Below, one piece after another: positions 1 through 64,000 of a stretch of DNA of 64,000 bases (positions are counted from its first letter, which is position 1; the number at the start of each line of letters is the position of its first letter). Position numbers and translations under genes: made by a program. Source of the stretch: Paramoeba atlantica (Eukaryota > Protista > Discosea). The stretch lies in contig CDRNVI010000012.1 in the NCBI GenBank assembly GCA_977017575.1, positions 868,001 to 932,000 of the forward strand, read 5' to 3'. The notes beneath the pieces are model-generated. The model worked only from the letters and a program-made list of their open reading frames with translations. It did no database searches and was not told the DNA's origin.

Positions 1-700
1 GCATGTACACCTTCGCCGACCGCGCCCACACCGACTGGGTCAACGCCGTGCGGTTCAGCCCCCGCGCGGAGAGCCCCTTCATCGTGAGCGCCGGGGCGGA
101 CCACCTGGTGAAGCTGTGGTCCGTGAACCCCTTCCGCCACGCCATGGACTTCGAGGGCCACGACGGGTACGTCAGCACCGTCGCGGTCTCCCCGGACGGG
201 TCGCTGTGCGCGAGTGGGGGGAAGGACGGGGTCACGATGCTGTGGGACCTCAGCACGGGGTCGCACCTGTACCAGCTCGAGGCCGGGGAGGTGATCCACG
301 CCCTCACGTTCTCCCCGAACCGGTACTGGCTGTGTGCCGCCACGGAGAGCTGTATTCGGATTTGGGATTTGGAGTCGAAGAAGGCCGTCGCGGAGCTTGC
401 CCCGCCCTGCCCCACGATGAGTCGTAAGGCACTGAAGCCGGAGTGTATCTCGTTGACGTGGTCCGCGGATGGCAACACGCTGTACACGGGACACACCGAC
501 AACACCATCCATGTCTTTGGGGTACGTGAGTGAGAAGAAAGTAAATGTTGAGGTAAAGTCGAAGGGAGAAGTTTTAGGTGATAAAGTAAGCGAAGGAAGT
601 GGAAATAAAGGATGTTTGTCAGAAATCGTCGTTTGCGGAGTTTGAAATGGTATTGTTTCGTGTTGTAGTGGAAACTATCGTGTATGGTAAAATCTGTAAA
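1..700. other. Right part of a skew-switch island (left arm mostly outside window)
   Basis: RACK1 is GC-rich with C-ending then G-ending codons, followed by a G-rich/C-poor non-coding tail at 530-700. Confidence 0.6.
3..533 (+). CDS. RACK1: RACK1 (receptor for activated C kinase, WD40), 5' end outside window
   Basis: RACK1-type blades: HTDWVNAVRFSP, GHDGYVSTVAVSPDGSLCASGGKDG, FSPNRYWLCAAT, C-terminal CISLTWSADG.TLYTGHTDN. Confidence 0.95.
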   Translation: MYTFADRAHTDWVNAVRFSPRAESPFIVSAGADHLVKLWSVNPFRHAMDFEGHDGYVSTVAVSPDGSLCASGGKDGVTMLWDLSTGSHLYQLEAGEVIHALTFSPNRYWLCAATESCIRIWDLESKKAVAELAPPCPTMSRKALKPECISLTWSADGNTLYTGHTDNTIHVFGVRE

Positions 701-719
701 CTTCTTTTTGTTTGTAAGC

Positions 720-810
720 GACGCAGCGATTAATCCCTGCAGTGTCCCAGTTACTGATTCATACCCAGTACTTCATGGACCTGCAGTTTCATAGCTTGCG
801 GAGATTTATT
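720..810. repeat. 91-bp direct repeat, copy 1
   Basis: gacgcagcgattaatccctgcag...gcttgcggagatttatt is identical to 1614-1704. Confidence 0.95.
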
Positions 811-1049
811 GATCAGCGGTTTATACATGTGTCTACTTTTCACGCTTCAAGAAGATTACATGGAGAAGTATACCATGACTAGTACTTTCGTTTGAACCCA
901 CCCATGTTGCGAGAAAGCAAGTGTGTGATGCTCGGCACTTGGGACCGCAGAGAGGATTTGATCTCACGAACGACTCTCCGGAGCGAGTGGACCTATCCCT
1001 TTCTATGATAATACGCATTTGTTTTTAAACCCAAAATCCCCGCCCAGTT

Positions 1050-1470
1050 CGCGAGCGCTATTGAAGGCATTTTCGAGGTCCGCCGCTGCTGTGACATCCT
1101 GTGGTCTGTCGCTGAAATGGTCGTGCACCTCATGGACGATGTGCTCAGACTGGGTGCTTCGGACCCCAAAATTATAGGCCTTGTAAAAAGGTGGGCAGGT
1201 GTTCATGCACCCTTTCGAGGGTGAGAAGACCTGCCACCTTCAAAAGCAGGCCTTCATGGCGATGGGGCGATATGTGAAATGATGTCCCGAGTGATTCGCT
1301 CAGTTTGGAGAACATCTGCAGTAAATAGTTCACTCAGAGAGGGTAGGGTCAAAATCGTCAGGATGCCATGAATAATTCGAGTAATGCAGTCCCGGTGGCC
1401 GTCCTCCATAAGGATTGAAACCAGCAGCTCTTTGGTGCTAAGCCAGACTTGGCCAGCTGCTTGATCCCCA
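1050..1470 (-). pseudogene. Decayed non-LTR retrotransposon reverse transcriptase fragment (CRE/SLACS-like)
   Basis: Frameshifted minus-strand translation gives AAGQVW..KELL, YRPIAM, LKVAG, NFGV..SEHIVH and ADLENAFNS in the order expected for CRE-clade RT domains 0-3 (RPIA, QFGV, E.IVH, D..NAFNS). Confidence 0.7.
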
Positions 1471-1526
1471 CTCAGTATTCCCTTGCCGTAATACGTAAGC
1501 TAGTAGTATAAACTACTGCACTCCCT

Positions 1527-1567: not shown

Positions 1568-1613
1568 GAGTTTTTACCAATTCGTACTTCCTCTGCACTT
1601 CCAAAGTTGAAAT

Positions 1614-2949: not shown

Positions 2950-3289
2950 AGTGTCCATTGCACGCACAATTAATATTGTTACCCTTTGCCTGACCCTCTC
3001 ACCTACAACACCCTCTCCATCACACTGCAGCTGTACCCTGAAATGCAGTGTATCATCCGAGGTCTTAATTTTTTGGTAAAAACCTTCCTCACACACCGAA
3101 AAATGACATCGTGCGTTTCGCTCTTAAAACCCTGGAATAGATTTTAACATCTGTGGTACACACGAAAATGTTAGCTTTAACAACCGATTTCTCCAGGACT
3201 TTACCTCACACATCCCTTTTCTCAACTTCTTTTTCTCAACTTCCCCACCTAAAAACCCTCTTTTTACCCCTTTCCCCTTTCTCCCCACC

Positions 3290-3946
3290 ATGCCACCTCC
3301 CCACCACCCCCACCCCACCCTCTCCCCTTTTCTTCTCTTCCTCCTCCTCCTCCCCCTCCCCCCCCTCCCCTCCTCCGACCCCTCCGACGACCCCCCGTCC
3401 CTCTCCCTCTACCACGACCCCTACTCCAGCCCCCACACCTCCTTTGGGGCCTACACCCCCGACCCCTTGGCCTCCCCCTTCCACGACCCCCTCGACACCC
3501 ACCTACGCGAGAGCAACACCTCCTCCTCCCCCTACCCCCCCTCCTCCTCCCCCTACCCCCCATCGTACTCGTACTCGTCTTCCTCCCGTTCCTCCCCCCC
3601 TCACTTCCGTGCGGAGGACCCCACGGAGGAGCGTGACAGCGCCCACGAGTGGAACCTCGACGCGTGCTGCGCCTCCCTCCCGCGCCCCGTGCGCTGGCTG
3701 CTGTGCCCGCTCGCGCTGTTCTACTGCTGGGCGCGCTGGGACCGGGTCTGGTACAGCTGGTGGAACTACCCCGGGACGTACGGCACCCGGCCCGGGGGGG
3801 AGATCTACGACGGGCCGCGGCCCGATACGTGGGGCCCCGGGGCGGAGGTCCCGGATAGGACGGGGAGTGGGGCGGGGAGGGGAGGGGGGGAGAGGGGGGA
3901 GAAAGGGGGTGGGGGAGAGGGGGGGGAAGGGGGGGGGGGTGTATAG
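3290..3946 (+). CDS. Hypothetical low-complexity protein with Cys/Trp-rich hydrophobic segment
   Basis: Only the 3290 frame gives a protein-like core (EWNLDACCASLPRPVRWLLCPLALFYCWARWDRVWYSWWNYP); start uncertain. Confidence 0.4.
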   Translation: MPPPHHPHPTLSPFLLFLLLLPLPPLPSSDPSDDPPSLSLYHDPYSSPHTSFGAYTPDPLASPFHDPLDTHLRESNTSSSPYPPSSSPYPPSYSYSSSSRSSPPHFRAEDPTEERDSAHEWNLDACCASLPRPVRWLLCPLALFYCWARWDRVWYSWWNYPGTYGTRPGGEIYDGPRPDTWGPGAEVPDRTGSGAGRGGGERGEKGGGGEGGEGGGGV

Positions 3947-4046
3947 GGTAAGGGGAGGGCGTGGGGAGGGGGAGGGGGGGAGGTACGGTACACCGCCGTC
4001 GTTTGCGAGATGGCCGACGCCGGAGATGGGGTGATGGGGGGAGGGA

Positions 4047-4070
4047 TGTGTGTGTGTGTGTGTGTGTGTG
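4047..4070 (+). repeat. (TG)12 microsatellite
   Basis: Direct reading. Confidence 0.95.
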
Positions 4071-4285
4071 TCGAGTTTAGGGCCAAGTTAGGGTTGATTG
4101 AAAAAGGAGAGGATAGGTGAAGGGGTATTGGGAAAGAGGTTTACAGGGAACTTGTAGAAAAGGTTTGATTTCTTGGAAATTTTAAGAATTCGTTTTTTTC
4201 TTTGCTACACAGAGAAAAAGGGTATGTCGGAAAGAGGTCGAGCACTTCAGAGTTATGGACGTAAAAAAAGTAAGATGGAAAAGTA

Positions 4286-6061
4286 ATGCCGAAGCTGCAC
4301 AACATAAATGTGGGGATACTGGGTCACGTTGACAGTGGAAAGACCACGCTGGCGAAGGCTTTAAGCACTGTGAGTAGCACCGCATGCTTTGACAAACATC
4401 CCCAAAGTAAGGAGCGAGGTATAACTATCGACTTGGGATTTAGTTCTTTTTCCTTACCGCTTACGTGCTCGTCAGGCGATACAACGGACGGTGATCGCAT
4501 TCAATTTACCTTAGTAGATTGCCCAGGACACTCCAGCTTGATTCGCACGGTTGTCGGAGGTGCGAACATAATTGATTTTGCTCTCCTAATAATTGACATC
4601 ACGAAGGGATTGCAAGCTCAGAGTGCCGAGTGCATTCTTATCGCTGAAATACTCGAAATACCGCTTCTCGTGGTTTTAAACAAGACTGATTTGTTGCCGT
4701 CTGGCCCCGAAGGCGCGACGCGAATCAATCTTCTTCGGAAACGGTTGAAAAAGCAGTTCGAGTCCACGCGGTGGCCTAATGTAGAAATGGTACCAGTAGC
4801 GGCTCGTGTGAACAATGGGAACGTCTACCAGGTCGAAGAATTGAAAAAAAAGATGTATGAAATAGCGTATGCGATTCTGCTCGATAAAGGCAAGGCTTTT
4901 ACGCCTGGTGGGGAAGAAGCTTATCTTTCTAATAATTTGAGAGAGTTGGGAAATGACTTTGGTTTTTATATGTATGTGGATCACTGTTTCGCTTTGCAAG
5001 GGAAAGGGGTTATCCTCACAGGTACCGTGGTCAAGGGAAGACTTGCTGTCGGTGATACAATTGATATACCCGCCTTGGGGTACCAACGAAAAATTCGCTC
5101 GATGCAAGTTTTTCATCAGAATGTATCATTTGTGCACTCAGGAGACCGCGTTGCTATTTGTGTGTCAAACGTACCACCCGAAAAAATTGAGCGCGCCCTT
5201 GTGTGTGCACCGAACTCAACAAGCATATACTCAGCGGAGCGATTTATTGCCCGCGTTCGTCGGATACGATATTATAAAGCCGCACTTCACTCAAAACAAA
5301 TGATGTTATTATGTGTAGGGCACTCCACATGTTTGGCACGAGTACACTTCTTTTACTCTCAGGAAAAATGTTTTTCGCTGCAGAACAAGTATTGTTATCT
5401 TAGCCAACTTCCCGAAGACTCGTCAGTTAAGTTTGTCTCTTCAAAAGGTAGCGACAATGCTAGCGAGTGTACTTCTTACAGACCTCTCCGAAACGAAGAG
5501 GATCGGTATTGCTACTATGCCTTGATAGAGCTTGAGCATTCTCTAATCATGCCGCACAACGCTACAATTATAGGCATGGACCAGCAAGATGTGTTTGAAG
5601 GCGTCGGAAAGTGTCGCATTGCTTTGGAAGGAAAAGTGGTCTTTTCACTTACACAAGAGCGTCAAAAATTACTAAAAATAATGCGTTGGAAGTCATATGC
5701 GTTGACAATCGACCGTATAATCGATGAAAAGTCATGTGTCATACAAAATCCTGGACGCCGATTGATACATGCAGAGCACTCATGTACATACTTTCAACCG
5801 CCAGACTACCATCCTGATCCAAACTATCGGCTTATGGAACAATTGATATCCAAGAACATGCTAAATAACTCTCAAAAAATAACGGAGTCCTGTGATTTAC
5901 CTTTTTGTGGCACCCTGGGTGCAACTTTTGGAACCAAAGGAAAGATTAAGATCCAGTTTGCACATCCCGTCTTTGGAAAACGCGGCGCAAAGCATGAATA
6001 TCGGCACTACCAGATAATTTTACACAAGCAGGTTTGTGTTACTCCTGGGCATGCTAGCTAA
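4286..6061 (+). CDS. EEFSEC: Selenocysteine-specific elongation factor (eEFSec/SelB)
   Basis: NINVGILGHVDSGKT, FDKHPQSKERGITIDLGFSSF, TLVDCPGHSSLIRT, NKTD; DHCFALQGKG..LTGTV domain II. Confidence 0.93.
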   Translation: MPKLHNINVGILGHVDSGKTTLAKALSTVSSTACFDKHPQSKERGITIDLGFSSFSLPLTCSSGDTTDGDRIQFTLVDCPGHSSLIRTVVGGANIIDFALLIIDITKGLQAQSAECILIAEILEIPLLVVLNKTDLLPSGPEGATRINLLRKRLKKQFESTRWPNVEMVPVAARVNNGNVYQVEELKKKMYEIAYAILLDKGKAFTPGGEEAYLSNNLRELGNDFGFYMYVDHCFALQGKGVILTGTVVKGRLAVGDTIDIPALGYQRKIRSMQVFHQNVSFVHSGDRVAICVSNVPPEKIERALVCAPNSTSIYSAERFIARVRRIRYYKAALHSKQMMLLCVGHSTCLARVHFFYSQEKCFSLQNKYCYLSQLPEDSSVKFVSSKGSDNASECTSYRPLRNEEDRYCYYALIELEHSLIMPHNATIIGMDQQDVFEGVGKCRIALEGKVVFSLTQERQKLLKIMRWKSYALTIDRIIDEKSCVIQNPGRRLIHAEHSCTYFQPPDYHPDPNYRLMEQLISKNMLNNSQKITESCDLPFCGTLGATFGTKGKIKIQFAHPVFGKRGAKHEYRHYQIILHKQVCVTPGHAS

Positions 6062-15637: not shown

Positions 15638-15641
15638 ACTC

Positions 15642-16525: not shown

Positions 16526-18925
16526 TTGGAGCAAGAACCAACTAGAATAGCATTTACAGGCTTTGAAAAAGAAGTAATTAAGAAGTTTGAAGTCTCCACA
16601 AATTCTTGTGAATGGCTCACGGTACAGAAAGATATTTCACAACGAACCTCGGTTCTAATCTGTGCTTGCGTAGCAACTCATAAATATGTTTACGCAGTGA
16701 AACATAAGATACCATGCGTTCAGAGGACTTGGCTAACCGAGTCCGTTCGAACGGGATACCCCTTGCATTGTATCGAAAAGTTCATGGTTCCTCCACTACA
16801 TGGTCTGCGAATATCCGTAACAGGAGGATCTCAAAGACAGAGGGAAGAAGTAGCGACGAAATGCGTGCAGGCAGGTGGGCAATTTTCAGCCAACTTGGAT
16901 AAATATGTCCATTGTCTTATCATACTTCAAAAGAGCGAAGCGGGACGTATTCAACAAGGGCCAAAAATAGATTTTGCAAAAAAGTATAAAATTCGTACGG
17001 CGAATTTAGAGTGGCTGATACAAATTATTGCGCAGGGTTACTGGAACGACACCGTGTGCGATCAAGATTCCGCGCATGCTTCTCACTCTGTTCGTATGCT
17101 TTCGAATTCCCCTGAAAACTCCACTTTAAAAGTACAATCGCCCACCACGAAGGAATGTTACTTGAACGACTTCTTTGTATGGTTTCTAGGCGAACTTCCT
17201 TTACATTTTTCTGGCACAAAGGAAGCGACTGGATTTGTGCACGATAAGGTTCTATCTTCACATACAAATATCATATGCCTATCTGGGGTGAAACTGAACG
17301 ATCTGGATGTGTGTAATGCATTTCAACGTGTAGACCCAGAGTTTCGTCGCTTCGCTATACAACTGTGGTTAGAGGGAAAAGCGACCCTTCTACACTGGTC
17401 GTACTTTTTGCTATGTGCTTCATTAAAATCGAAGCAAGATTTAGCCATCTATACAATCCCTCCATGCCTGCACTATTTTGAAAGAGTCATAGGATTGCAT
17501 TCTTCAATTTCTATTAAAGAAAAACAGGAATTGGCCATTATCGTTGAGCGATTGAACGGTTGTGTGCTGTTTATGGATTTCATGGAACCTGGTCCAGACG
17601 ATGGTGTCAATGAAAACATAGAAAATATATGCAGAATATCATCTCATCTTATTGTGCGTCAGGAGGACGACTTGACCTCGGGTAGGCGTATTAAAAGCCT
17701 ACCAAAAAATCATCCCACGCCCATTTTTGCTTATGCCAGCTGGCTTCGAGATTGTGAAATCCAAAACAAATGGATGGAACCGCGCAAGGAACATTTATAC
17801 CCAACGGAGAATTTTCAGAGGCCACTGCGACCGATGCTAGAATCAGCAGCTTATATGCGACAGCCCTCAGTTACATCTACAAACAACTCCTTTACACCCA
17901 CGTCCCAAGACCCTTACAAGCACGATCTCAAAAGAGAACGATCTGACACCTCCTCAACTCAAAACTTCCACAACGAAACAACTCAACCGGATCGATCCGA
18001 CGAAATCCTTGCCTTGTTTTCGCAACGTTGCAAAGCCCAACCTCCACAACCTCAACCCTCTCCCCCCCCTCCCACCTCCACAAACCCTCCCCTGCGCTAC
18101 TCTTGCCTCCATCGTACCTTTGTACCCCGCCACCTCGACCCCACCCCCACCTCCCCCCTCTACGAAAGCCAACGCGTCATCTACAACCACAACCCCTCCC
18201 CCTCTCCCCCTCCCCCCTCCCCTCCCCCCCCCTACCGCTTCCTGCTCGGCCACAAGGACCCGCGGCAGCGCTCGGCCCTCATCGCCCACATCCGCGCGCT
18301 CCCGGGGGCCACCGTCGTGGGGTCCGTGTCGTCCTGCACGCACTACCTCCCCCCCCGCGCCTCCAGGTCCGAGACCTTCCTCTCCTGCATCGCCTCCGGG
18401 AGGTTCATCCTGCGCCCCGCCTTCCTCACGGAGAGCGTGCGGCACGGGGCGTGGCAGGACCCGGGGGGGTATGAGTGGGGGGTGGGGGTGGAGGGGGAGG
18501 GGGAGGAGGGGGGGGTGGGGAGTATGACCACACAGTCACTGCTGCTTCAGGCGTGTCGAACGTGGCGACTCCGGGGTGGGGGGGCGTTTGGGGGGTGGAG
18601 AGTGGTGTTGGTGATGAGGGAGGTGGGGAGGAGGAAGAGTTTTGGGAATGTGTTGCGACGGGGGGGTGCGTCGTGGGTGGGGGAGGTGAGTCCAGAGGAG
18701 GTGGAGAGGGGGGAGAGGTTGTGCGAGTTTGAGAATCCGAACTATGTTATCTATGATGATGGTTTGGATGAGGAGGAACAGCGAGCGATGTATGGTAAAC
18801 TCCGGGGTAGGACGAAGAATTCGTCGCATGTGCGCTTGGAGTGTATTATTTTCGTATTGACCTATCCGGATGAAGTGATTCCAGGGGCCTTGCGCGTGAA
18901 CGGTCGTAGTCATAAATTCAGGTGA
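16526..18925 (+). CDS. TOPBP1: TOPBP1/Rad4/Cut5-like multi-BRCT protein (start codon unresolved)
   Basis: N-terminal BRCT pair (VPPLHGLRISVTG); C-terminal BRCT7/8 pattern CTHY...RSETFLSCIASGRFILRPAFL.ES...GYEWG and GAFGGWRVVL...R.KSF..VLRRGGA. Confidence 0.85.
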   Translation: MEQEPTRIAFTGFEKEVIKKFEVSTNSCEWLTVQKDISQRTSVLICACVATHKYVYAVKHKIPCVQRTWLTESVRTGYPLHCIEKFMVPPLHGLRISVTGGSQRQREEVATKCVQAGGQFSANLDKYVHCLIILQKSEAGRIQQGPKIDFAKKYKIRTANLEWLIQIIAQGYWNDTVCDQDSAHASHSVRMLSNSPENSTLKVQSPTTKECYLNDFFVWFLGELPLHFSGTKEATGFVHDKVLSSHTNIICLSGVKLNDLDVCNAFQRVDPEFRRFAIQLWLEGKATLLHWSYFLLCASLKSKQDLAIYTIPPCLHYFERVIGLHSSISIKEKQELAIIVERLNGCVLFMDFMEPGPDDGVNENIENICRISSHLIVRQEDDLTSGRRIKSLPKNHPTPIFAYASWLRDCEIQNKWMEPRKEHLYPTENFQRPLRPMLESAAYMRQPSVTSTNNSFTPTSQDPYKHDLKRERSDTSSTQNFHNETTQPDRSDEILALFSQRCKAQPPQPQPSPPPPTSTNPPLRYSCLHRTFVPRHLDPTPTSPLYESQRVIYNHNPSPSPPPPSPPPPYRFLLGHKDPRQRSALIAHIRALPGATVVGSVSSCTHYLPPRASRSETFLSCIASGRFILRPAFLTESVRHGAWQDPGGYEWGVGVEGEGEEGGVGSMTTQSLLLQACRTWRLRGGGAFGGWRVVLVMREVGRRKSFGNVLRRGGASWVGEVSPEEVERGERLCEFENPNYVIYDDGLDEEEQRAMYGKLRGRTKNSSHVRLECIIFVLTYPDEVIPGALRVNGRSHKFR
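17850..18800. other. C-rich to G-rich skew-switch island (switch ~18445)
   Basis: C-runs 18050-18430, G-runs 18460-18730, inside TOPBP1. Confidence 0.9.
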
Positions 18926-46852: not shown

Positions 46853-48853
46853 ATGGTCGATACGACGTCGAAAAACCTTGACGCAACCGAAGTAGATGAC
46901 ATGTCCGCACACCTCAGTGAAGCAAAAATAGACTCACGATCAAGCACAAACAACGATGCGCAGCGAAAGCAAGACACTTCCTCCTCTCGACGTCCTCCCC
47001 CCATCGCGCTTCCCACGGAATCTCACGAGACAAAGCCCTCCGATGAAGCTTCTGGAACCAAGCTCGAGCCTCGTACCCCTGTAGCGGTGGACCTTCCCAA
47101 CAGTGCCTTGCAGAACGCACTTCCGTACCTTACACTGGAGGGTCTGCTCACCGCCCGATCCGTCTCCCGCAGCCTTCTACACGCCGTGCACGGACGCTAC
47201 CTCACTATGTACAACCAGGGCGTCGTGTTCCTCCACGCCCCTGAGGGGGGTTATGCCACCTACCTAACGTCAACCGACAATGCCCACCGCTGTCTAACCT
47301 GTGGAGGCCCACGGCCGGGAACCCATGCAGAACCCGGAGCGATGAAGTATAAGAACATGGAGAGTGTCCCGGAGACCTCCGCGCATCCTAGCGATACGTC
47401 GGCTGCGAAGGAAACGGACGGCGCGTCGTGTGTCGCGTGCGCTCCTCCCGCCTCCCGGCTGTTTGTCGGTCAGCTCCGCCGTCAGCATACCGCCGGGTCG
47501 ATTTTGTGGGCCCTCGCGATGGTCGCCCCTGAGGTGGCCATCGCCCACGTCGACAACCGCACCAACCGCGACACTGGCCGCGAGAAGGGGTGTTGCTGGA
47601 TCCACATTCCCTCCCGCTTCGAGTCCACCCTCCTCGGTCTCAACCGTCGCCTCCTGTTCGACATCAACCCCCACGGCGGCTCGCTCTCCCAAGGCGAGGG
47701 GTTCTGGCGCGTCCCGGACCACTTCGCCCGGGTCTCTGACCTCGAAGGCTTTGCCCTACGCCGGGTCGAACGCGACCTCCTCCTCCCACGCCGCCCCGTC
47801 GTCATCGAACGCGCCAACGGCTCCGGTGGCCGTGACCCCACCCGTGGACCCCGTGGCGGTCTCCACAACCTCCCCTCCCTCACCCGACACACCCCTCGTG
47901 AGTGTGCCCGAGCCACCCCTCTTAGTCTCCACCCCGCAACCGCTCCCCCACCCCCACCCCCTCACCCCCCGATGCCCCCCACAGGTCTCCATCCCTCCAC
48001 CCTCCCCGGTACCATGACAACCCCGATGCCCACCACAACCCACCGGGACACAACCACCACCACGACGACTCCTCACCCTACGGCTACGACTACCCTTCCC
48101 CCCCCCGTTGCCCCCTACCCCCCGACCTGCACCCCCACCGGCCCCTCCCCCCGGGCCCCCGCCCCCCCCCTCCCGCTCTTCCGCGTCCCCTCCGGCACCT
48201 GGGTCCCCTCCCCCGACGGCACCACGCTCGTCCACGTGGCCTGCGCGTGCGCGGAGTGCCAGGCGCTCCGGGTGCTGGGGAACGAGACCCCCGCGGCGTC
48301 CCCGGTGACCCCCACGGGGGCGGGGGCGCGCTGGCCCGGGGCGGACTCCCCCGCGAGGGTGCGGTACGGGTCGGGGATCGGGGCCGTACCCCATCCCCAC
48401 CCCCCGGGGATGCGGCGGAGTCACAGCGGGGTGATGGTACACCCGTACAACCCACAGGGTATGCCGCGGGGGGAGAGTGGGGAGGTGATGATGGGGAGTT
48501 CGGCATCGCTGGAGGGGGGGGCGTTGGTGGCGGGGGTGCATACCCCGCCGTATATGGTGATTACCCCGGAGCTGGGCGAGCTCTCCGGGATGGGAGGGGG
48601 GGGGATGATGGGACACTACCCGCCTCCGATGATGATGGCCCACCCCTCGGAGGAGATGTTGGCCTCGAGTGAGAATGTGACCCCGGCGCCGGTGCTGGTG
48701 GATCCCTCGGTGCCGTACCCTGTGAGTCCGTTGCTGGCGGGGTACCACCCGGGTGGGGGGTCTCCGGTGTTTACGGCCACGAATGTGGCGTTTGGTTCTC
48801 CGCAAGGTGTGCGTCACCGGGCACGGTCCGGTACTCCGCACAACCAGGGATAG
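46853..48853 (+). CDS. Putative F-box-like + divergent RRM-like protein with low-complexity tail
   Basis: LPNSALQNALPYLTLEGLLTARSVSR (F-box pattern); RLFVGQL...KGCCWIH...LLGLNRRLLFD (RRM-like RNP2/RNP1). Confidence 0.6.
   Translation: MVDTTSKNLDATEVDDMSAHLSEAKIDSRSSTNNDAQRKQDTSSSRRPPPIALPTESHETKPSDEASGTKLEPRTPVAVDLPNSALQNALPYLTLEGLLTARSVSRSLLHAVHGRYLTMYNQGVVFLHAPEGGYATYLTSTDNAHRCLTCGGPRPGTHAEPGAMKYKNMESVPETSAHPSDTSAAKETDGASCVACAPPASRLFVGQLRRQHTAGSILWALAMVAPEVAIAHVDNRTNRDTGREKGCCWIHIPSRFESTLLGLNRRLLFDINPHGGSLSQGEGFWRVPDHFARVSDLEGFALRRVERDLLLPRRPVVIERANGSGGRDPTRGPRGGLHNLPSLTRHTPRECARATPLSLHPATAPPPPPPHPPMPPTGLHPSTLPGTMTTPMPTTTHRDTTTTTTTPHPTATTTLPPPVAPYPPTCTPTGPSPRAPAPPLPLFRVPSGTWVPSPDGTTLVHVACACAECQALRVLGNETPAASPVTPTGAGARWPGADSPARVRYGSGIGAVPHPHPPGMRRSHSGVMVHPYNPQGMPRGESGEVMMGSSASLEGGALVAGVHTPPYMVITPELGELSGMGGGGMMGHYPPPMMMAHPSEEMLASSENVTPAPVLVDPSVPYPVSPLLAGYHPGGGSPVFTATNVAFGSPQGVRHRARSGTPHNQG
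46970..48850. other. C-rich to G-rich skew-switch island (switch ~48300)
   Basis: C-runs 47560-48220, G-runs 48320-48780. Confidence 0.9.
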
Positions 48854-49182: not shown

Positions 49183-50568
49183 ATGAGGCTTTCGCCTTTC
49201 AGTTCTTTGGTCAAGACCAACGCAACTATTGGGAGGTTGAATTTTGCTTTTGACGCATTTTCTGGAATAGCAATCCCACCAAGGCCCCGTAGGAAATATG
49301 CTCCTGCAAGAAGATTTGCTTCTTGTTGTCGTGGTCATGAGCGCACGCTGTGGTTTTCCAGCAAGCGAATGTACTGGAACCCCTTTTTGTCTTCGAGTAG
49401 TCAACGTTTCAATTGGAGAAGGTATCGACCGATTTGTTGGGTTTCTGGTGCAGCGATTACAGCCCTTTTTTTGTTTGACAGTCCAGCTGCACGCCTTCAA
49501 ATAGCGCGTGAAAAGTTTCACTGTTTCATAGAGAGGTGTTCCTTATTTTTAAGAGATTTGAAATCGTTACCAGTGTCCTTGGCTAGTCGAAAATTAAGCG
49601 GAGATCAGGCAGAGTTCAACTTTGAAAGCGTGGAAGATCTGGACAGCAATGAGTCTCTGGAAGAATATATTGCTGCAATGAGCATAAAATCACCCAAGAA
49701 AGAGACTGGCAAGAAGCGACGTACTGGAAAACCGCCTCCTGGCTTCACCAATGCTTTTCAAGCTTACGCACTGGGGGATATCATTCCTCTCACTCACGAT
49801 GTCGCACTGCTTCGCTTTCTTTTTGATGACCCCGACACTGAGTTTAACCTCAGGCCTTGTAGCACACTACAAGGAAAGTTCACCACAGGTCTTCAGCTTG
49901 CCGATTTGATAACCCGGTTCTACACCCCCGTGACCCCTAACCACACAAAAGGCTATTTCGACATCATTGTCAAGCGCAAACCGAATGGAATGATGACAAA
50001 ACACTTATTCGGGCTACACGTCGGTGACCGCATGCATTTCCGTGAGGTCCCTTTCAAACTGCTGTACAAACCCAACCGGTGGAAAGAGGTTGGTCTCATT
50101 GCCGGGGGCACGGGACTCACCCCAATGCTTCAGGTCATCCGGCACGCCTTGGAGGAGTACCCCGAGGACCGTACCAAGCTGCGGCTTATCTTTTGCAACC
50201 GCACTGAGAACCACATCCTGTTAAAAGGGCTGTTGGACCGACTCGCCCGGGACCATCCCGAGCGGTTCTCTGTGGTCTACGGTGTGGACTGTCCGGTGGA
50301 TGCGGAGAGGTGGAAGGGGTTCACCGGGTACCTCACCGCCGATCTGCTCCGGGCTCACCTGCCCCCACCCTCCCCTAGCTCGCTTATTCTGGTATGTGGG
50401 CCAGACAATTTGCTGTGGCACGTTGCCGGGACCCCGACCCAGCTGATGGATACCCTCTCCGGGGGTCGCCCGGTACAGCCCATGGCCGTGGATCTTGCCA
50501 ACCTGACCAAACTTGGGGGTTTGTTGGCACAGTTGGGATACACGGATCATGACGTGTATCGGTTTTGA
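49183..50568 (+). CDS. NADH-cytochrome b5 reductase-like flavoprotein, probably mitochondrial
   Basis: RFYTP, FDIIVKR.PNG.MT.HL, LIAGGTGLTPMLQVI, LIFCNRTE, ILVCGP. Confidence 0.9.
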   Translation: MRLSPFSSLVKTNATIGRLNFAFDAFSGIAIPPRPRRKYAPARRFASCCRGHERTLWFSSKRMYWNPFLSSSSQRFNWRRYRPICWVSGAAITALFLFDSPAARLQIAREKFHCFIERCSLFLRDLKSLPVSLASRKLSGDQAEFNFESVEDLDSNESLEEYIAAMSIKSPKKETGKKRRTGKPPPGFTNAFQAYALGDIIPLTHDVALLRFLFDDPDTEFNLRPCSTLQGKFTTGLQLADLITRFYTPVTPNHTKGYFDIIVKRKPNGMMTKHLFGLHVGDRMHFREVPFKLLYKPNRWKEVGLIAGGTGLTPMLQVIRHALEEYPEDRTKLRLIFCNRTENHILLKGLLDRLARDHPERFSVVYGVDCPVDAERWKGFTGYLTADLLRAHLPPPSPSSLILVCGPDNLLWHVAGTPTQLMDTLSGGRPVQPMAVDLANLTKLGGLLAQLGYTDHDVYRF

Positions 50569-50801
50569 GGGTCTGAATTGGGATGATATTGGGTTCAAAA
50601 ATGCTTGTAGGTCTGCTCTGACGACGATAACATTGTCTTAAGCATAGTGATGTTTTTGTTATAGGGCTCCGTTCTTTTCAAAGAAATACAAAATTGTTTT
50701 TATTTACCTCAGATTAGATCACACGGAGATGTGCATTGGTACGCATCAAAATATTGCATAGTGTAACTAGGAAACATGATTTATTTCCCTACGTTGTTCA
50801 T

Positions 50802-57085: not shown

Positions 57086-57369
57086 TTTGTTATGCTTTAT
57101 CTGTGTATTCTAGGGCTCCTAGTCTAGAGTTATAGAATGAACACTAGGTAATTATTTCAACACAGGGGTCTCTCAAATACGAATTGAACATTATTTTAAT
57201 TCACTTTATTCATTTGTATGCTACGTAATGTATCATACAGAATGTGACATTCAGTAATAGATGCGAATCATTTTCATATAACGTCTAATATAACATCCTA
57301 TACACCAATTTTAGTCAAACATTCGTACATCTAATACATAAAACACTACGTATACTACATCCCCGCGGA

Positions 57370-58851
57370 ATGACATCTATTCCCAGACAGGATTTTCCCG
57401 GATCACAACTCCGATCGCACTCCACAGCACGAACTCTCTCATCGAGCGCACGCCCGACCCCACACATTTCTCTTCACAAATCCTTCTCCACCCTACCCCC
57501 TTCCCGAGGCTCCACGCCCCTTCCCTTGCGGGACCCCACCCCCATACTCTCACGGAATCGACCCCCTCGCTTGTCCCTTCGCCCCGCCCACACCGTCCGC
57601 ACCTCCCTCCGCGTCACCACGGCCTTCCACAACTCCTCTGAGGTCCTGTGCTACGGCGGCCCGAACGGACTCGGCCTACTCCACACCCGCTACCTCCACC
57701 AGCACGTCACCCCATCCCCCGGAATCGCCCCCCGTGCCATTCTCCCCTACCTCCCCGACCGTGACGCCAACCGCTTCCTCCTCCTCCTCCCCCACGGTGA
57801 GGTCCTCTCCCTGGACGGTACCCCCCATGCGGAGCTCACCCCCTACACCACACTCACCCTCCCGAGTCCCGCTCCCCCCTCCTCAGGTACCCCCCCTCCT
57901 ACCCACGGGAACCTCCACAGCGCCACCGTACTCACCCCCTCCCCCTCCGTCGTCGTGAGTACCACTCATGGAGGGCTGTTGCTGTGGGATGGTGAGGCCC
58001 ACGCCCCTTTCCCTAATAACTCTTCCACTACTCACTCCACTACTCACTCTACCACCCCTACCCCTAACTCTATGACGCCTCCTCCTCACTCTTCTTCTCC
58101 TACGGCTACTACCTCTTCCTCTCTCCAGCCCCTTCGTCCCCCCCTCCCCGGTCTCTGTGTTACGTGTTCCCAACACGAGTCCGGCCCCTACGAGCCCTTA
58201 CTGCTCCACACCCACACGCTGTCGTTGCTCTACGACCTGCGGTGTGAGAGGGTGGTGGGGCGCTTCCCCGTGGGGAGGGGGGGCTCGGGGGGGAGGGCTG
58301 GCCTTCCGGCGGGTAGGACAGGCAGCTCCTTGGGTACAGCCTCGACGCTGTCACCTGGAGTGTTCCCTTTTGCGGGAAATGTATCCAGTGTGTCGGCTGG
58401 GATGGCCGGCAGGAGTTGTGTTGGCACACAGGTCCCTGAGATCTTGTGTGCGACCCGTGAGGTCTCGGGACGGTACCTTGCGGTAGCGAGTGGGGCGGGG
58501 CGGGTGGGGTTGTGGGATGTGCGAAAGGGAGGGGGGAGGGAGGGGGAGGGGGGAGTACGAGGGGGGGAGGTGACCTCGGTGGAGGTACCGGGTGGGGTCA
58601 CGGCGATGGGGTCTGGGCTGGCGTGTGCGTCGGGGACTTTTTTTATGGGGACAGCGCAAGGGGAGGTGTGGACGTGGGGGAGTGGGAGTGAGGAGGTTGC
58701 GCGGTTGGAAAAGGGAGTGGAGTTGGGGGGTAGGGAGGATCGGTCAGCGATTACCACCGTTGTAGTGCCCTCGATGGCGTGTGGGGGTGGGCAGCACGTG
58801 ATGACGTTCTCGGAGAGTACGCAGGCGACGGTGTATGAAGTGCGAACGTAG
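57370..58851 (+). CDS. Putative WD40/beta-propeller protein
   Basis: YLAVASGAGRVGLWDVR, FFMGTAQGEVWTW, GGLLLWDG strand patterns. Confidence 0.6.
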   Translation: MTSIPRQDFPGSQLRSHSTARTLSSSARPTPHISLHKSFSTLPPSRGSTPLPLRDPTPILSRNRPPRLSLRPAHTVRTSLRVTTAFHNSSEVLCYGGPNGLGLLHTRYLHQHVTPSPGIAPRAILPYLPDRDANRFLLLLPHGEVLSLDGTPHAELTPYTTLTLPSPAPPSSGTPPPTHGNLHSATVLTPSPSVVVSTTHGGLLLWDGEAHAPFPNNSSTTHSTTHSTTPTPNSMTPPPHSSSPTATTSSSLQPLRPPLPGLCVTCSQHESGPYEPLLLHTHTLSLLYDLRCERVVGRFPVGRGGSGGRAGLPAGRTGSSLGTASTLSPGVFPFAGNVSSVSAGMAGRSCVGTQVPEILCATREVSGRYLAVASGAGRVGLWDVRKGGGREGEGGVRGGEVTSVEVPGGVTAMGSGLACASGTFFMGTAQGEVWTWGSGSEEVARLEKGVELGGREDRSAITTVVVPSMACGGGQHVMTFSESTQATVYEVRT

Positions 58852-61446: not shown

Positions 61447-61633
61447 AACAAGAGGGTCCTTTTAAGTAAACTTTTTTTCTTGAGCTGCTAATCCTGGAAG
61501 AGGAGCCACCTAAACAATATGAAAAGTGCAACATACAAGTAGTTTATGTCTCAGAACACCCTTGATGTTTATACCTTAAACTTCTTGGTTATACCTCAAA
61601 CTATTACGATTCTACTATTAAAATCTATGCATC

Positions 61634-62767
61634 ATGATTCACCGAACCGCTTGTCAATGGATCAAAACCATTAAGCCAGCGAACATGCAGCGTCCCCGTC
61701 ACTATGACGGACTTTCAAAGATGTGGGCTGGGCGTGACACAAACATGAAGTGGACCGAGTACTACGACGGCTACACAGACGACTATGGTACCTTTAAGGA
61801 AGGCGCACCTACCTCCCTACGTCTGGAGTACATTCGCTCTCCAGAGCATAAAACCTCAAACCTAGAGTTCCTTCGCTATCTATGGTCTCCGTTCGAGGTT
61901 GGTAGAGACAAAGCCAATTACTCTCCTCTTTTCTGGGACCGGCAAAGTTACGGCAACAGAGACATGGAAGGACACGCACGAGGTCTAGCCCCCGGTGAGC
62001 CCAAGCGCAACTGTGTCGGAATGAAAACCAAACGAGAGGTACCCATGGGAGGCAGTCGATACTCTGTGAACTACAAGCCGCTGCATCGAATTCCGAAGTG
62101 GCTTGCGTACATTGTACACGACCGCGAACGAAAACGTTTGCTGGGATTCTTTCTGTACAGCAACGGGTGTTACGTTGCGGAGCTACTGACGTACAAACAG
62201 ATTCCCCGGCTTGTGTACAACAAGTATTTTCAAAAGTACATCCCGACTCTGGGGCAGACCGTCGAGCTCCGTCAAATTACCTATGGTAAGGAATTCCACT
62301 CGCTGGAGTGGTACCCAGGGGGTGGAGCAAGCATGGTACGAGCGGCCGGGACCTCGGCTGTGATCCTACGCGGAACGGAACCAAATTTGGTACCTGTGCT
62401 GCTACCGAGCACGGAGGTTCGATTATTCGAGGATAACTGTCACTGCGTGTTTGGACGGCGTGCCGGGGTCATGCAGCGCTACACCCGTTTCGGGGGATTT
62501 CGCACTCGTATAGGAATTCGTATGGTGCGACCTCGGAGCAAGAAGAACCAAGTGAAAATGGACCAGCACCCCGCAGGAGGGGGGAATGGCTCCAAGTGGC
62601 ATTTAATTTTTCCACTGGATTACCGCATTCACCCAGTGTCACAGAAAACGAAGCATTGGCTCTCGTCGTATATTTTGCGAGGACGATTGTACAACAAGCA
62701 TATGTCGATTGCTGAAATCAAGGAGAAAACATACGGGTGGAAAAGTCGCGATCCAGTTTATCGATAA
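61634..62767 (+). CDS. MRPL2: Mitochondrial ribosomal protein uL2m
   Basis: LE..PGGGA..VRAAGTSA.IL, V.LPS.EVR.F, DQHPAGGG.G; N-terminal extension. Confidence 0.85.
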   Translation: MIHRTACQWIKTIKPANMQRPRHYDGLSKMWAGRDTNMKWTEYYDGYTDDYGTFKEGAPTSLRLEYIRSPEHKTSNLEFLRYLWSPFEVGRDKANYSPLFWDRQSYGNRDMEGHARGLAPGEPKRNCVGMKTKREVPMGGSRYSVNYKPLHRIPKWLAYIVHDRERKRLLGFFLYSNGCYVAELLTYKQIPRLVYNKYFQKYIPTLGQTVELRQITYGKEFHSLEWYPGGGASMVRAAGTSAVILRGTEPNLVPVLLPSTEVRLFEDNCHCVFGRRAGVMQRYTRFGGFRTRIGIRMVRPRSKKNQVKMDQHPAGGGNGSKWHLIFPLDYRIHPVSQKTKHWLSSYILRGRLYNKHMSIAEIKEKTYGWKSRDPVYR

Positions 62768-62947
62768 ACTGCTTCATTTCTAAGATTTCTTGTAGATAGT
62801 TTAGGTTTTTTAAATATTTCTGTTCTACATGTACCTGTGGTCTTCACATGCTCGAGTGCCAAATATCGAATATTTTTTGAAAGTAATTTTCGTTTACCCC
62901 TTTTTAGGAAAGATTGCGATTCACATACTACAGCAATCACTTACATT

Positions 62948-64000
62948 ATGATGACTGCACCATCTCCCACTGTCGACAGTTCCCTACTCGATGACGCACT
63001 AAGCTCTGCGCTTCATAATTTATACCCCACCGGTCCACCCAAGCGCAATACCGAAAACTTACCTCCCAGCGAGCCCCCAGATAAAGCCATCCCTCGGGTT
63101 AAAATCGCCTCACGACCTCCCCCCCAGGAGGAACCTCCCCACACCTCGCCCCCCGAGACCTGTTGCCTCCACATCCCCACCCTGGAACCCGGAGTCACGG
63201 ACCAAACCCTCTTCGAGGCCTTTGCCCCGTTCCACGCCCTTGACGCCTTTGTCATCCAAGACCCCGCACTCTACACCTTCTCCACCTCCACCAGTCCCCC
63301 CACCTCCCCTCCCCCTCCCACCCCCACCCCACCCGCCGGCATCCTCCTCTTCCGTGACCCCACCACCGCCGCCGCCGCCGCCGAACGCGTCTCCCTCACC
63401 GGCCTCGTCCCCTCCCCCCCCTCCTCCCCCCCTCCCCCCCTCCCCGAGCTCGCGCGCTCCCCCCCCGCCTCCGCCCTCCGCACCCCCCTCGGTTGCGCCC
63501 ACCGCGGCTGCCGCACCCTCCTCTGCATCCTGCTCCACTCCCCGCACCACACCCAGGGCGCCACCGCGGAGGTGCTCTCCGCGCTCGAGGACCCCCGCCA
63601 CGCCGCGGCCATCCTCGCCCACCCGCGGTTCGTCTCCCCCGGGCTCGGCTCCGTCGTCGCGCGCGCCCGCCCCGAGCTCCGCCCCCACCTCTCCCGCGAG
63701 CTCCTCACCACGCTGCTCCGCGAGGACAGCGCCGAGGGCTACGTCGCGGAGGCCATGGCGCTCTGGGGGGAGCTCTTCGCCCGGGGGTGCTTCCGCGGGG
63801 TCAGCACCCCCGGGCGCGTGCTCGAGGCCGTGCTGGAGTCCGGGGTGGGGCTCACCCGGAAACGGGTAAAGGGGTTGTGTGGGTTGGTGGCCCGCACGAC
63901 ACGGGAGGGGTGGGAGGGGGAGGCTGTGGAGGGGGTGCTGCGGAGGTTAAGGGGGCGGAGTGTGGAGCCGGAGGGGAAGGAGGCGTTGGTGGAGCTGTGT
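62948..64000 (+). CDS. RRM + helical (MIF4G-like) protein, 3' end outside window
   Basis: Open frame from ATG 62948 to the window end (absent from the ORF track): LHIPTLEPGVTDQTLFEAF...AGILLFRDPTTAAAAA (RRM-like), then LWGELFARG helical region. Confidence 0.6.
   Translation, partial: MMTAPSPTVDSSLLDDALSSALHNLYPTGPPKRNTENLPPSEPPDKAIPRVKIASRPPPQEEPPHTSPPETCCLHIPTLEPGVTDQTLFEAFAPFHALDAFVIQDPALYTFSTSTSPPTSPPPPTPTPPAGILLFRDPTTAAAAAERVSLTGLVPSPPSSPPPPLPELARSPPASALRTPLGCAHRGCRTLLCILLHSPHHTQGATAEVLSALEDPRHAAAILAHPRFVSPGLGSVVARARPELRPHLSRELLTTLLREDSAEGYVAEAMALWGELFARGCFRGVSTPGRVLEAVLESGVGLTRKRVKGLCGLVARTTREGWEGEAVEGVLRRLRGRSVEPEGKEALVELC
62960..64000. other. C-rich to G-rich skew-switch island (switch ~63770)
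   Basis: C-runs 63110-63720, G-rich from 63770. Confidence 0.88.

What the first reader, a model, noticed from the sequence alone, without database searches (positions are those of the whole stretch)
1..64000. Recurrent C-rich to G-rich skew-switch islands: a positional, strand-symmetric mark along a unidirectional gene cluster
Seen: at least eight GC-rich islands of ~1-2 kb, with switch points near 250, 3770, 18445, 27990, 42070, 48300, 58220 and 63770 (weaker ones near 20250 and 50400). Each has the same polarity on +: C-rich (A/C tails) on the left, a CpG-rich centre, G-rich (G/T tails) on the right. The pattern is therefore identical read from either strand, although every gene is on +. 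It ignores gene boundaries and changes synonymous sites. Known: negative-to-positive GC-skew flips mark replication origins and bidirectional R-loop-forming promoters, and strand-asymmetric mutation flips at DSB hotspots. Inference: these are fixed, strong initiation or repair sites leaving an unusually local and extreme mutational footprint. Candidates are origins, internal Pol II start sites, gBGC hotspots, or sites of modified thymine (hmU/base J pathway) giving T>C on each strand 5' of the centre.
Basis: partly seen in the sequence, partly recalled or inferred. Interest (0 to 1): 0.88.

Follow-up and report, generated by a model that had tools for sequence, protein, structure and literature searches.

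The report
Mirror-skewed GC islands inside kinetoplastid genes
In a protist related to the amoeba symbiont Perkinsela, about one gene in five carries a 1-kb patch driven to 65-80% GC that is C-rich in its first half and G-rich in its second. Syntenic relatives lack these patches, so they look like scars of a local DNA process in this lineage that has not been described.

Summary
An unbiased scan finds 7 strong C-to-G skew switches (3724, 18429, 27972, 42075, 48235, 58237, 63719), two weak ones (20283, about 50400) and one cut by the window edge (about 193). There is no independent island of the opposite polarity.

- **Depth of the signal:** the skew persists at fourfold-degenerate sites (C 0.55-0.71 on the left, G 0.53-0.70 on the right, background about 0.2) and extends into non-coding flanks.
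- **Not an artefact:** independent assemblies from two other samples span island 18429.
- **Not an insertion or palindrome:** V-ATPase H aligns colinearly with orthologues through its island, and the arms pair no better than composition predicts.
- **New here:** syntenic loci of Perkinsela and two other relatives (56 kb) have no islands. An outgroup NudC has none either, so the islands arose in this lineage.
- **Link to genes:** every switch lies 125-650 bp upstream of a stop codon.

The substitution pattern is "any base to G" on the strand that runs 5'-to-3' away from the centre. Human CpG islands and bacterial origins show the same polarity. Human meiotic break hotspots and T. brucei SNS-seq origins show the opposite.

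My best reading (about 0.4) is sites of bidirectional duplex opening with error-prone bypass. Recombination/gBGC hotspots (about 0.25) remain open. The scan has flagged the same pattern repeatedly on other pieces of this genome.

The parts
1..533 (.). Island A, truncated by the window edge. Switch at about 193, inside the 3' part of a WD40/RACK1-like gene (3-533).
   Evidence: GC 0.62-0.70. GC3 is 0.90, with C3/G3 running from 0.71/0.29 to 0.29/0.49, against GC3 0.51-0.56 and no flip in orthologues of L004/L005. WD40 match in Pfam.
3174..4324 (.). Island B, the strongest. C-arm 3174-3724, switch 3724, G-arm to about 4324. It covers a small ORF (3290-3946) with no family match and both of its non-coding flanks. 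A (GT)12 run lies at 4048-4071.
   Evidence: Skew runs from -0.92 to +0.74 and GC reaches 0.75. The left non-coding tail has G 0.03 and the right spacer has C 0.09, against 0.19 background. G4 motifs lie on the minus strand at 3299-3561 and on the plus strand at 3862-3980.
17829..18829 (.). Island C, in the last 1.1 kb of a BRCT-repeat gene (16526-18925). Switch at 18429.
   Evidence: C3 reaches 0.78, then G3 0.78. A BRCT domain is encoded across the core at aa 589-647. Independent contigs of runs X1 and X2 span it. At least 11 of 17 differences fall in 916 bp of island.
19983..20383 (.). Weak island D, at the 3' end of ORF 18990-20408. Switch at 20283.
   Evidence: D = 0.2 peak. C3 0.45-0.47 with G3 0.07-0.15, then G3 0.47.
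27222..28472 (.). Island E, covering the whole NudC gene (27331-28356). Switch at 27972.
   Evidence: Pfam matches Nudc_N and CS, with the CS domain at the core. Orthologue GC3 is 0.42-0.61 with no flip, against 0.73 here.
41575..42375 (.). Island F, in the middle of the V-ATPase subunit H gene (41349-42722). Switch at 42075.
   Evidence: C3 0.72-0.85, then G3 0.57-0.68, while GC2 is nearly flat. Colinear alignment with 6 orthologues. The L005 orthologue has GC3 0.40 against 0.71 here.
46900..48800 (.). Island G, compound. There is a weak partial switch near 47330 and the main switch at 48235. It covers ORF 46853-48853 (no family match). GC reaches 0.81.
   Evidence: G4 motifs lie on the minus strand at 47872-48174 and on the plus strand at 48587-48612.
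49730..50570 (.). Weak island H, at the 3' end of a cytochrome-b5-reductase-like gene (49129-50568). GC3 is 0.7-0.8 with only slight skew.
   Evidence: FAD_binding_6 and NAD_binding_1 domains in Pfam.
57287..58837 (.). Island I, covering ORF 57370-58851 (no family match). Switch at 58237.
   Evidence: Skew runs from -0.67 to +0.68. C3 reaches 0.82, then G3 0.70. The left non-coding tail has G 0.07.
63000..64000 (.). Island J, truncated by the window end. Switch at 63719, inside a gene read in the frame that starts at 62762.
   Evidence: GC up to 0.81, skew from -0.65 to +0.48. Frame translation. G4 motifs lie on the minus strand at 63296-63488 and on the plus strand at 63903-63920.

Best explanation
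**Shown.** The islands are a lineage-specific, non-adaptive footprint at the DNA level, written over ordinary genes at fixed sites. The footprint reduces to one rule. On the strand that runs 5'-to-3' away from the island centre, every other base is replaced by G, and C is avoided. Two such tracts of about 1 kb, one per strand, overlap by a few hundred bp. The overlap gives a core that is near 100% GC at silent sites and has no skew. The non-overlapping parts give the C-rich left arm and the G-rich right arm.

**Inferred (about 0.4).**
- The centres are sites where the duplex is opened bidirectionally and repeatedly. They would be CpG-island-like initiation zones: divergent R-loop-forming transcription, or less likely replication initiation.
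- The outward-running strand is the one left single-stranded.
- Its damaged bases (deaminated C and A, abasic sites) are bypassed by a polymerase that inserts C opposite them, as REV1 does. This yields C>G and A>G on the exposed strand.
- G-richness of the displaced strand stabilises R-loops. The process could therefore reinforce itself, which would explain why genes carry either an extreme island or none.
For: - **DNA-level and synonymous.** Fourfold sites have C 0.55-0.71 with G 0.03-0.09 on the left, and G 0.53-0.70 with C 0.06-0.19 on the right. Background is A .27, C .19, G .21, T .33. Non-coding tails show G 0.03-0.07 on the left and C 0.08-0.09 on the right of island B.
- **Two offset tracts.** At twofold sites the T>C drive spans about -700..+150 and the A>G drive about -400..+700. 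The C fraction at NNY sites drops to 0.30 in the right arm, below the 0.41 background.
- **Mirror symmetry.** Residual base frequencies in the two arms are complements of each other.
- **Lineage-specific.** Syntenic loci in relatives have no islands, and the NudC tree places the window as sister to the Perkinsela clade.
- **Hypermutable.** SNP density is about 7 times higher in island 18429 than in its flanks.
- **Polarity matches known cases.** Around human CpG islands the A>G/T>C ratio is below 1 upstream and above 1 downstream, C>G/G>C symmetry is broken, and the pattern resembles bacterial origins (PMC2817419).
- **The substitution types are known for exposed single strands.** C>G is called a REV1 signature and occurs with A>G on single-stranded DNA (PMC7615360).
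- **G4 arrangement.** All 23 G4 motifs of the window lie in the arms, on the outward-running strand.
- **Discrete islands.** Island-free genes have flat GC3 of 0.41-0.49.
Against: - There is no direct evidence of transcription or replication starting at the centres. The only RNA-labelled run did not cover the region.
- One internal bidirectional start site per 7-9 kb contradicts the accepted picture of kinetoplastid polycistronic units.
- In T. brucei, R-loops are intergenic and not linked to GC skew (PMC6294496). SNS-seq origins there have the opposite G4 topology.
- A replication-based skew should extend far beyond 0.4-0.9 kb.
- The model does not explain why switches sit 125-650 bp before stop codons.
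- The polarity argument assumes that exposed-strand chemistry in this protist resembles that of humans and bacteria.
Confidence: 0.4

Rival explanations
1. The centres are recombination-initiation hotspots (meiotic or mitotic double-strand breaks). GC-biased gene conversion builds the GC core, and strand-specific repair of the resected flanks builds the two arms.
For: - Silent-site GC near 100% over about 1 kb is what gBGC at stable hotspots produces.
- gBGC is known to rewrite conserved genes (gerbil cases PMC6573468 and PMC7403616).
- Arm length of 0.4-0.9 kb is the scale of resection and conversion tracts.
- Human hotspots have an unskewed +/-100 bp core with strand-asymmetric flanks (PMC7615360).
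- SNP density is raised in island 18429.
- Spacing of about 7-9 kb is hotspot-like.
- The islands are absent from the endosymbiont Perkinsela.
Against: - In human hotspots the strand that gains G (C>G, A>G) is the resected 3' overhang. That is the forward strand to the left of the break. This predicts G-rich left and C-rich right, the reverse of all 10 islands.
- A variant with breaks in the flanking spacers predicts adjacent G-arm/C-arm pairs across spacers. None exists.
- gBGC alone is strand-symmetric.
Confidence: 0.25
2. The centres are replication origins. The skew is the leading/lagging asymmetry seen at bacterial origins and at some yeast centromeres.
For: A negative-to-positive skew flip is the classical origin signature, and the same polarity is reported around human CpG islands.
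Against: - The skew decays within 0.4-0.9 kb instead of running to the next terminus.
- T. brucei SNS-seq origins are intergenic, poly(dA)-flanked, and have G4 on the plus strand upstream and on the minus strand downstream. This is the opposite arrangement.
Confidence: 0.1
3. The arms are selected structural elements, with G-quadruplex or i-motif tracts on each strand. They could act as chromatin boundaries, base-J entry sites or Pol II pause sites near gene ends.
For: - All 23 G4 motifs are strictly polar and confined to the arms.
- Leishmania base-J entry sites show G/C strand bias with G-runs (PMC4344527).
- Switches are anchored 125-650 bp before stop codons.
Against: - In constrained coding parts the pressure only sets third positions to G or C, which does not build G-runs.
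- It damages proteins, for example by proline- and glycine-rich insertions.
- Relatives do without it at the same genes.
- Polymorphism is raised rather than reduced.
Confidence: 0.1
4. Modified thymine (the hmU/base J pathway) causes T>C on each strand 5' of the centre.
For: The organism is a kinetoplastid, a group that makes base J.
Against: At fourfold sites G (0.03-0.09 against 0.21) and A (0.07-0.14 against 0.27) are depleted in the left arm as much as T. Non-coding left tails lose G without gaining GC. A thymine-specific lesion cannot do this.
Confidence: 0.05
5. The islands are an assembly or base-calling artefact, a mobile palindromic insertion, or codon-usage selection.
For: Homopolymer-rich tracts are error-prone. 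The RACK1-like gene is probably highly expressed.
Against: - Independent contigs from two other samples carry island 18429.
- The arms are not sequence-level inverted repeats (z -1.9 to +1.35).
- V-ATPase H is colinear with its orthologues.
- The skew is present in non-coding flanks.
- A flip from C3 to G3 within a gene is not codon optimisation.
Confidence: 0.02

Closest known systems
Human CpG islands with bidirectional strand asymmetry and internal gBGC (Polak & Arndt 2009, PMC2817419)
   Same: A GC- and CpG-rich block of about 1 kb. T>C is in excess upstream and A>G in excess downstream. C>G/G>C symmetry is broken. There is a W>S excess inside. The polarity is the same as here.
   Different: Human ratios are only about 0.93 and 1.09 and extend for hundreds of kb. 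Here the skew reaches 0.7-0.9 and dies within 0.4-0.9 kb. Human islands sit at 5' ends and promoters. These sit in the 3' halves of coding sequences inside one-way gene clusters.
Mutational footprint of human meiotic break hotspots (Hinch et al. 2023, PMC7615360)
   Same: An unskewed core with strand-asymmetric flanks of about 1-2 kb. The substitution types are C>G (REV1) and A>G on a single-stranded tract.
   Different: The polarity is reversed. In humans the G-gaining strand is the 3' overhang, which is the forward strand to the left of the break. Here it is the forward strand to the right.
Runaway GC evolution by gBGC in gerbil genomes (PMC7403616, PMC6573468)
   Same: Local GC pressure strong enough to alter conserved proteins.
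   Different: The gerbil regions are large and I did not check whether they show a two-armed C/G flip. No recombination data exist for this protist.
[quoted passage not shown]
   Same: Kinetoplastid sites with strand-specific G4 tracts on both sides of a centre, spaced at about gene scale.
   Different: There G4 lies on the plus strand upstream and on the minus strand downstream, which is opposite. Those origins are intergenic and flanked by poly(dA)/poly(dT), with no GC island.
Trypanosomatid divergent strand-switch regions with G-tracts and GT-rich promoters (from my own knowledge, not checked here)
   Same: G-rich sense strand on both sides of a bidirectional Pol II start region.
   Different: Those lie between divergent gene clusters, about one per 100 kb. 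Here there are 8-10 in 64 kb, inside genes that all point the same way.

Membership tests
GC-skewed CpG-island-type bidirectional initiation zone | Block of at least 500 bp with GC at least 0.55-0.6 and CpG observed/expected at least 0.6 | tested here: met
   GC 0.65-0.81 and CpG o/e about 0.8-1.2 over 0.8-1.9 kb
GC-skewed CpG-island-type bidirectional initiation zone | Skew flips from negative to positive at the centre | tested here: met
   7 strong, 2 weak and 1 truncated island, all C-to-G
GC-skewed CpG-island-type bidirectional initiation zone | Divergent transcription and R-loops start at the centre | not testable with these tools
   The only RNA-labelled run (X5) laid one 166-bp contig, away from the islands
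GC-skewed CpG-island-type bidirectional initiation zone | Located at gene 5' ends or promoters | tested here: not met
   Switches lie at 0.5-0.9 of ORF length, 125-650 bp before the stop
gBGC recombination hotspot | Local W>S enrichment at silent sites over about 1-2 kb | tested here: met
   GC3 0.9-1.0 at cores. At the core, fourfold A is 0.00-0.02 and T 0.03-0.04
gBGC recombination hotspot | The bias is strand-symmetric (no G/C skew) | tested here: not met
   Arms have skew 0.5-0.9, also at fourfold sites
gBGC recombination hotspot | Flank asymmetry with the polarity documented at break hotspots (G gained on the 3' overhang strand) | tested here: not met
   The polarity is opposite to PMC7615360
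gBGC recombination hotspot | Raised crossover or conversion rate at the site | not testable with these tools
   This needs population or pedigree data. Only a raised SNP density was seen
Replication origin with skew flip | Skew persists along the replicon to the next terminus | tested here: not met
   Skew returns to about 0 within 0.4-0.9 kb of the switch
Replication origin with skew flip | Kinetoplastid SNS-seq origin topology (intergenic, G4 on the plus strand upstream and on the minus strand downstream) | tested here: not met
   The islands are intragenic. G4 lies on the minus strand upstream and on the plus strand downstream
Mobile element or palindromic insertion | The arms are sequence-level inverted repeats, and the block is an insertion relative to orthologues | tested here: not met
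   Left arm against the reverse complement of the right arm scores no better than within-block shuffles. V-ATPase H is colinear with its orthologues
Base-J entry site (Leishmania type) | G/C strand bias with runs of 3-4 G near the modified T | tested here: met
   23 G4 motifs in the arms. The feature is described in PMC4344527
Base-J entry site (Leishmania type) | Base J is actually present | not testable with these tools
   No modification data were available

The most novel reading that the evidence does not exclude
A basal kinetoplastid carries a dense set (about one per 7-9 kb) of intragenic, CpG-island-like sites where the duplex is opened in both directions inside one-way polycistronic units. 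A REV1-type 'insert C opposite damage' bypass on the displaced strand has driven a self-reinforcing runaway to near-pure C and G codon endings. This would be a new class of chromosomal landmark. It would also be the first evidence that kinetoplastid gene clusters can hold many internal initiation zones.
Probability: 0.3. Interest if true: 0.9.

Novelty: new variant of a known kind. Interest (0 to 1): 0.8.

Why it matters
Strand-asymmetric mutation around initiation sites and break hotspots is known, but only as effects of a few per cent that need thousands of pooled sites to detect. Here each site shows it at near saturation, so a single locus records the geometry of the process.

- **A direct readout.** Tract lengths, the overlap and the polarity can all be read from one island.
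- **A question for the field.** If the centres are initiation zones, the view that kinetoplastid polycistronic units lack internal start sites needs revising.
- **An extreme case either way.** If the centres are recombination hotspots, they are the most extreme biased-repair footprints known, and their strand polarity is reversed relative to humans.
- **Natural controls exist.** Syntenic relatives have the same genes in the same order without islands, so gain of the process can be dated and its cost to proteins measured.
- **A practical point.** The islands create spurious antisense ORFs, and proline- and glycine-rich stretches in proteins. Annotators of this genome should expect both.

Tried and rejected
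- **Hairpin or palindrome.** Local alignment of each left arm to the reverse complement of its right arm scored no better than shuffles within 50-bp blocks (z -1.9 to +1.35). The symmetry is compositional only.
- **Shared centre motif.** None is visible in the 180 bp around the ten switches.
- **Insertion.** V-ATPase H aligns colinearly through its island. The only addition is a short proline-rich stretch.
- **Strong protein rewriting in V-ATPase H.** Departures from columns conserved in at least 5 of 6 orthologues are 45% and 44% in the arms against 37.5% outside. This is a small difference, and the effect there is mostly synonymous.
- **General 3'-ward gradient.** Island-free genes are flat (GC3 0.41-0.49), with at most a faint bump 450-750 bp before the stop.
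- **Breaks in the flanking spacers instead of the centre.** No G-arm is followed by a C-arm across a spacer. In the 2.4-kb BRCT gene the C-arm starts mid-gene.
- **cDNA-mediated 3'-biased gene conversion.** This was prompted by the gene-end anchoring and by notes of SL-capped retroposition elsewhere in this genome. I know of no mechanism that would flip the skew within a cDNA.
- **Look-ups that gave nothing.**
  - The window's NudC and the PhM_4 protein are not on record.
  - Two V-ATPase H relatives had no retrievable DNA.
  - L002 is not a kinetoplastid locus.
  - L001 is a distant relative without islands.
  - The Perkinsela and Papus genome papers do not mention skew or GC-rich islands.
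  - Three literature searches found no description of such islands in kinetoplastids.

Full report
**1. Observation**

The window averages 46% G+C and all real genes lie on the plus strand. I scanned it with D(x), the G-C skew of the 400 bp to the right of x minus that of the 400 bp to the left.
- D has a standard deviation of 0.13 and seven peaks of 0.4-0.79. Cumulative-skew minima place them at 3724, 18429, 27972, 42075, 48235, 58237 and 63719.
- Weaker switches lie at 20283 and about 50300-50500. One more, at about 193, is cut by the window edge.
- Every negative (G-to-C) peak is just the outer edge of one of these islands. All ten islands therefore have the same polarity.
- Shuffling 100- or 200-bp blocks never reproduces the pattern.
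- In 200-bp windows the islands reach 65-81% GC. Skew runs from -0.5..-0.9 to +0.4..+0.74. CpG is not depleted.

**2. It is real DNA**

I laid 16500-22400 (5,901 letters, within the operators' limit) on Logan contigs of four runs.
- A 4.5-kb contig of X1 and two contigs of X2, from two other samples, run through island 18429.
- The X1 contig differs by 17 substitutions over about 4.4 kb, so it is not the same assembly.
- At least 11 of those 17 fall in the 916 island bases that the contig covers. That is about 1.2%, against at most 0.17% in the flanks.
- Depth spikes 5- to 20-fold at 18470-18666, with G-rich loose ends. This fits many similar G-arms elsewhere in the genome.
- The run labelled RNA did not cover the islands.

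**3. What lies under the islands**

Ordinary genes lie under them:
- a WD40/RACK1-like gene;
- a BRCT-repeat gene, with a BRCT domain encoded at the core;
- NudC, with its CS domain at the core;
- V-ATPase subunit H;
- a cytochrome-b5-reductase-like gene;
- four ORFs without family matches.

V-ATPase H aligns colinearly with six orthologues through its island. Its best hit is PhM_4, at 45% identity.

The arms are not true inverted repeats, and the centres share no motif. The islands are therefore an overprint on the genes, not an insertion.

**4. Anatomy at silent sites**

Third positions go from about 40% GC to 90-100%. C3 is 0.7-0.9 in the left arm and G3 is 0.65-0.78 in the right. In conserved genes the second positions barely move.

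| Fourfold sites, six islands pooled | A | C | G | T |
|---|---|---|---|---|
| Left arm | 0.07-0.14 | 0.55-0.71 | 0.03-0.09 | 0.11-0.22 |
| Right arm | 0.09-0.16 | 0.06-0.19 | 0.53-0.70 | 0.06-0.19 |
| Background | 0.27 | 0.19 | 0.21 | 0.33 |

The two arms are close to complements of each other.

Twofold sites separate two drives.

| Distance from switch | G fraction at NNR codons | C fraction at NNY codons |
|---|---|---|
| Background | 0.37 | 0.41 |
| -700..-400 | 0.37 | 0.72 |
| -150..0 | 0.85 | 0.93 |
| 0..+150 | 0.97 | 0.65 |
| +150..+400 | 0.82 | 0.30 |

- T>C acts from about -700 to +150, and A>G from about -400 to +700.
- C is actively avoided on the plus strand in the right arm.
- Non-coding flanks follow the same rule. 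Upstream tails have G 0.03-0.07, and the spacer after island B has C 0.09, against 0.19 background.
- All 23 canonical G4 motifs of the window lie in the arms. Fifteen are on the minus strand to the left of a switch and eight on the plus strand to the right.

**5. One rule fits all of this**

On the strand that runs 5'-to-3' away from the centre, A, C and T are replaced by G and C is avoided. Two such tracts, one per strand, overlap at the core.

**6. Links to genes**

The pattern is symmetric, but its placement is not gene-blind.
- All nine measurable switches lie 125-647 bp upstream of a stop codon. Only 37% of random positions do, which gives p of about 1e-4 for nine and 1e-3 for the seven strong ones, with a threshold chosen after the fact.
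- The C-arm carries more net skew than the G-arm in all 7 complete islands.
- In three short genes the island runs from about 100 bp before the start codon to around the stop.
- Spacing is irregular, averaging 9.1 kb for strong islands and 7.1 kb for all.
- Island-free genes are flat, so the islands are discrete rather than the tail of a general gradient.

**7. Relatives**

The NudC search led to three syntenic loci:
- Perkinsela sp. CCAP 1560/4 (L003);
- two ENA contigs of 0.99 and 1.42 Mb (L004 and L005).

L004 and L005 carry RACK1, SelB, PolA, NudC, XMAP215, SCO1 and V-ATPase H in the window's order. L003 shares a GTPase-NudC pair and several genes found downstream in the window.

None of the three has an island in 56 kb. 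D never exceeds 0.21, and L004 and L005 have no 200-bp window at 60% GC or more. Their overall GC, 0.43, is like the window's background.

| Gene | GC3 in relatives | GC3 in the window |
|---|---|---|
| NudC | 0.42-0.53 | 0.73 |
| V-ATPase H | 0.40 | 0.71 |
| RACK1 | 0.51-0.56 | 0.90 |
| SelB (island-free control) | 0.40 | 0.44 |
| XMAP215 (island-free control) | 0.40-0.46 | 0.41 |

(All.)

A NudC tree puts the window in a fully supported clade with these relatives. It is sister (85/85) to the Perkinsela, L004 and L005 group and has the longest terminal branch. The next outgroup, L006, has uniform GC3 of 0.61 and no flip. By parsimony the NudC island arose in the window's lineage.

**8. Mechanism**

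What is shown is a hypermutable or bias-driven, strand-symmetric DNA process in this lineage. Which process it is has to be inferred from polarity.
- **Human meiotic hotspots.** C>G (called a REV1 signature), A>G and C>A accumulate on the resected single strand, which is the forward strand to the left of the break. The +/-100 bp core is symmetric (PMC7615360). The substitution types match the islands, but a break at the centre would make the left arm G-rich, the reverse of what is seen.
- **Human CpG islands.** The A>G/T>C ratio is below 1 upstream and above 1 downstream, C>G/G>C symmetry is broken, and the authors liken the pattern to bacterial origins (PMC2817419). This polarity matches the islands.
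- **T. brucei.** SNS-seq origins have the opposite G4 arrangement. R-loops there are intergenic and not linked to skew.

I therefore favour repeated bidirectional opening at the centre, with damage on the displaced outward-running strand bypassed by insertion of C (about 0.4).
- The short arms fit R-loop-type opening better than replication.
- The overlap of the two tracts explains the GC core without invoking gBGC.
- Feedback through R-loop stability could explain the all-or-none distribution.

The other readings, with my odds:
- Recombination hotspots with gBGC stay plausible (about 0.25) if nascent-strand errors, rather than template damage, dominate in this organism.
- Origins: 0.1.
- Selected G4 elements: 0.1.
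- A thymine-only base-J route: 0.05.
- Artefacts: 0.02.

**9. Novelty**

I found no description of such islands in kinetoplastids.
- Three literature searches gave nothing.
- The Perkinsela and Papus genome papers do not mention skew or GC-rich islands.

The kind of phenomenon is known: strand-asymmetric mutation around a GC-rich initiation or repair site. Three things are new:
- the amplitude;
- the intragenic, 3'-anchored position within one-way clusters;
- the restriction to one lineage.

Earlier notes of this scan describe the same pattern on other pieces of this genome. My tests agree with them. They add the syntenic island-free relatives, the two-tract decomposition and the polarity comparison with published footprints.

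Noticed in passing
window 1-42722 against L004 and L005 (whole loci), and L003: Gene order RACK1 - SelB - PolA - NudC - XMAP215 - SCO1 - V-ATPase H is conserved with two ENA contigs of about 1 Mb. Perkinsela conserves it partly. The window is much less compact, with extra genes between the conserved ones.
   Followed up: partly
window 7556-8248, 20965-21876, 22164-23033, 38855-39787, 40141-40974, 59910-60596: Six paralogous leucine-rich-repeat genes share an N-terminal motif. 20965-21876 and 22164-23033 form a tandem pair with 241 of 282 aligned residues identical. None of the six carries an island. None is annotated at the matching places of the syntenic relatives.
   Followed up: partly
window 10321-13449: A family-A DNA polymerase with an N-terminal extension of about 500 aa. 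Genes of similar length (about 1006-1010 aa, PF00476) sit at the same syntenic place in L004 and L005, so the long form is conserved in the clade.
   Followed up: no
window 4286-6061: A selenocysteine-specific elongation factor (the L004/L005 orthologues carry euk_SelB_III). The organism probably keeps selenoprotein synthesis.
   Followed up: no
window 18144 and 19109-19120: Length polymorphisms between samples. Six bases (CCACGA) are inserted in the C-arm of island C in runs X1 and X2. A small cluster of deletions (8, 1 and 1 bases) lies in the next gene in X1, X2 and X4.
   Followed up: no
window 41466-42560 (-), 47756-48841 (-), 58230-58757 (-), 63110-63688 (-): Long antisense ORFs occur only inside islands, where stop codons are rare. 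They are likely to be mis-called as genes.
   Followed up: yes
window 18734-19883: One 433-bp contig of run X4 joins 19883 back to 18734. This could be an assembly chimera or a small rearrangement in that sample.
   Followed up: no
window 46900-47500: Island G looks compound. A first C-rich stretch ends in a skew-neutral patch near 47330 before the main C-arm begins.
   Followed up: partly
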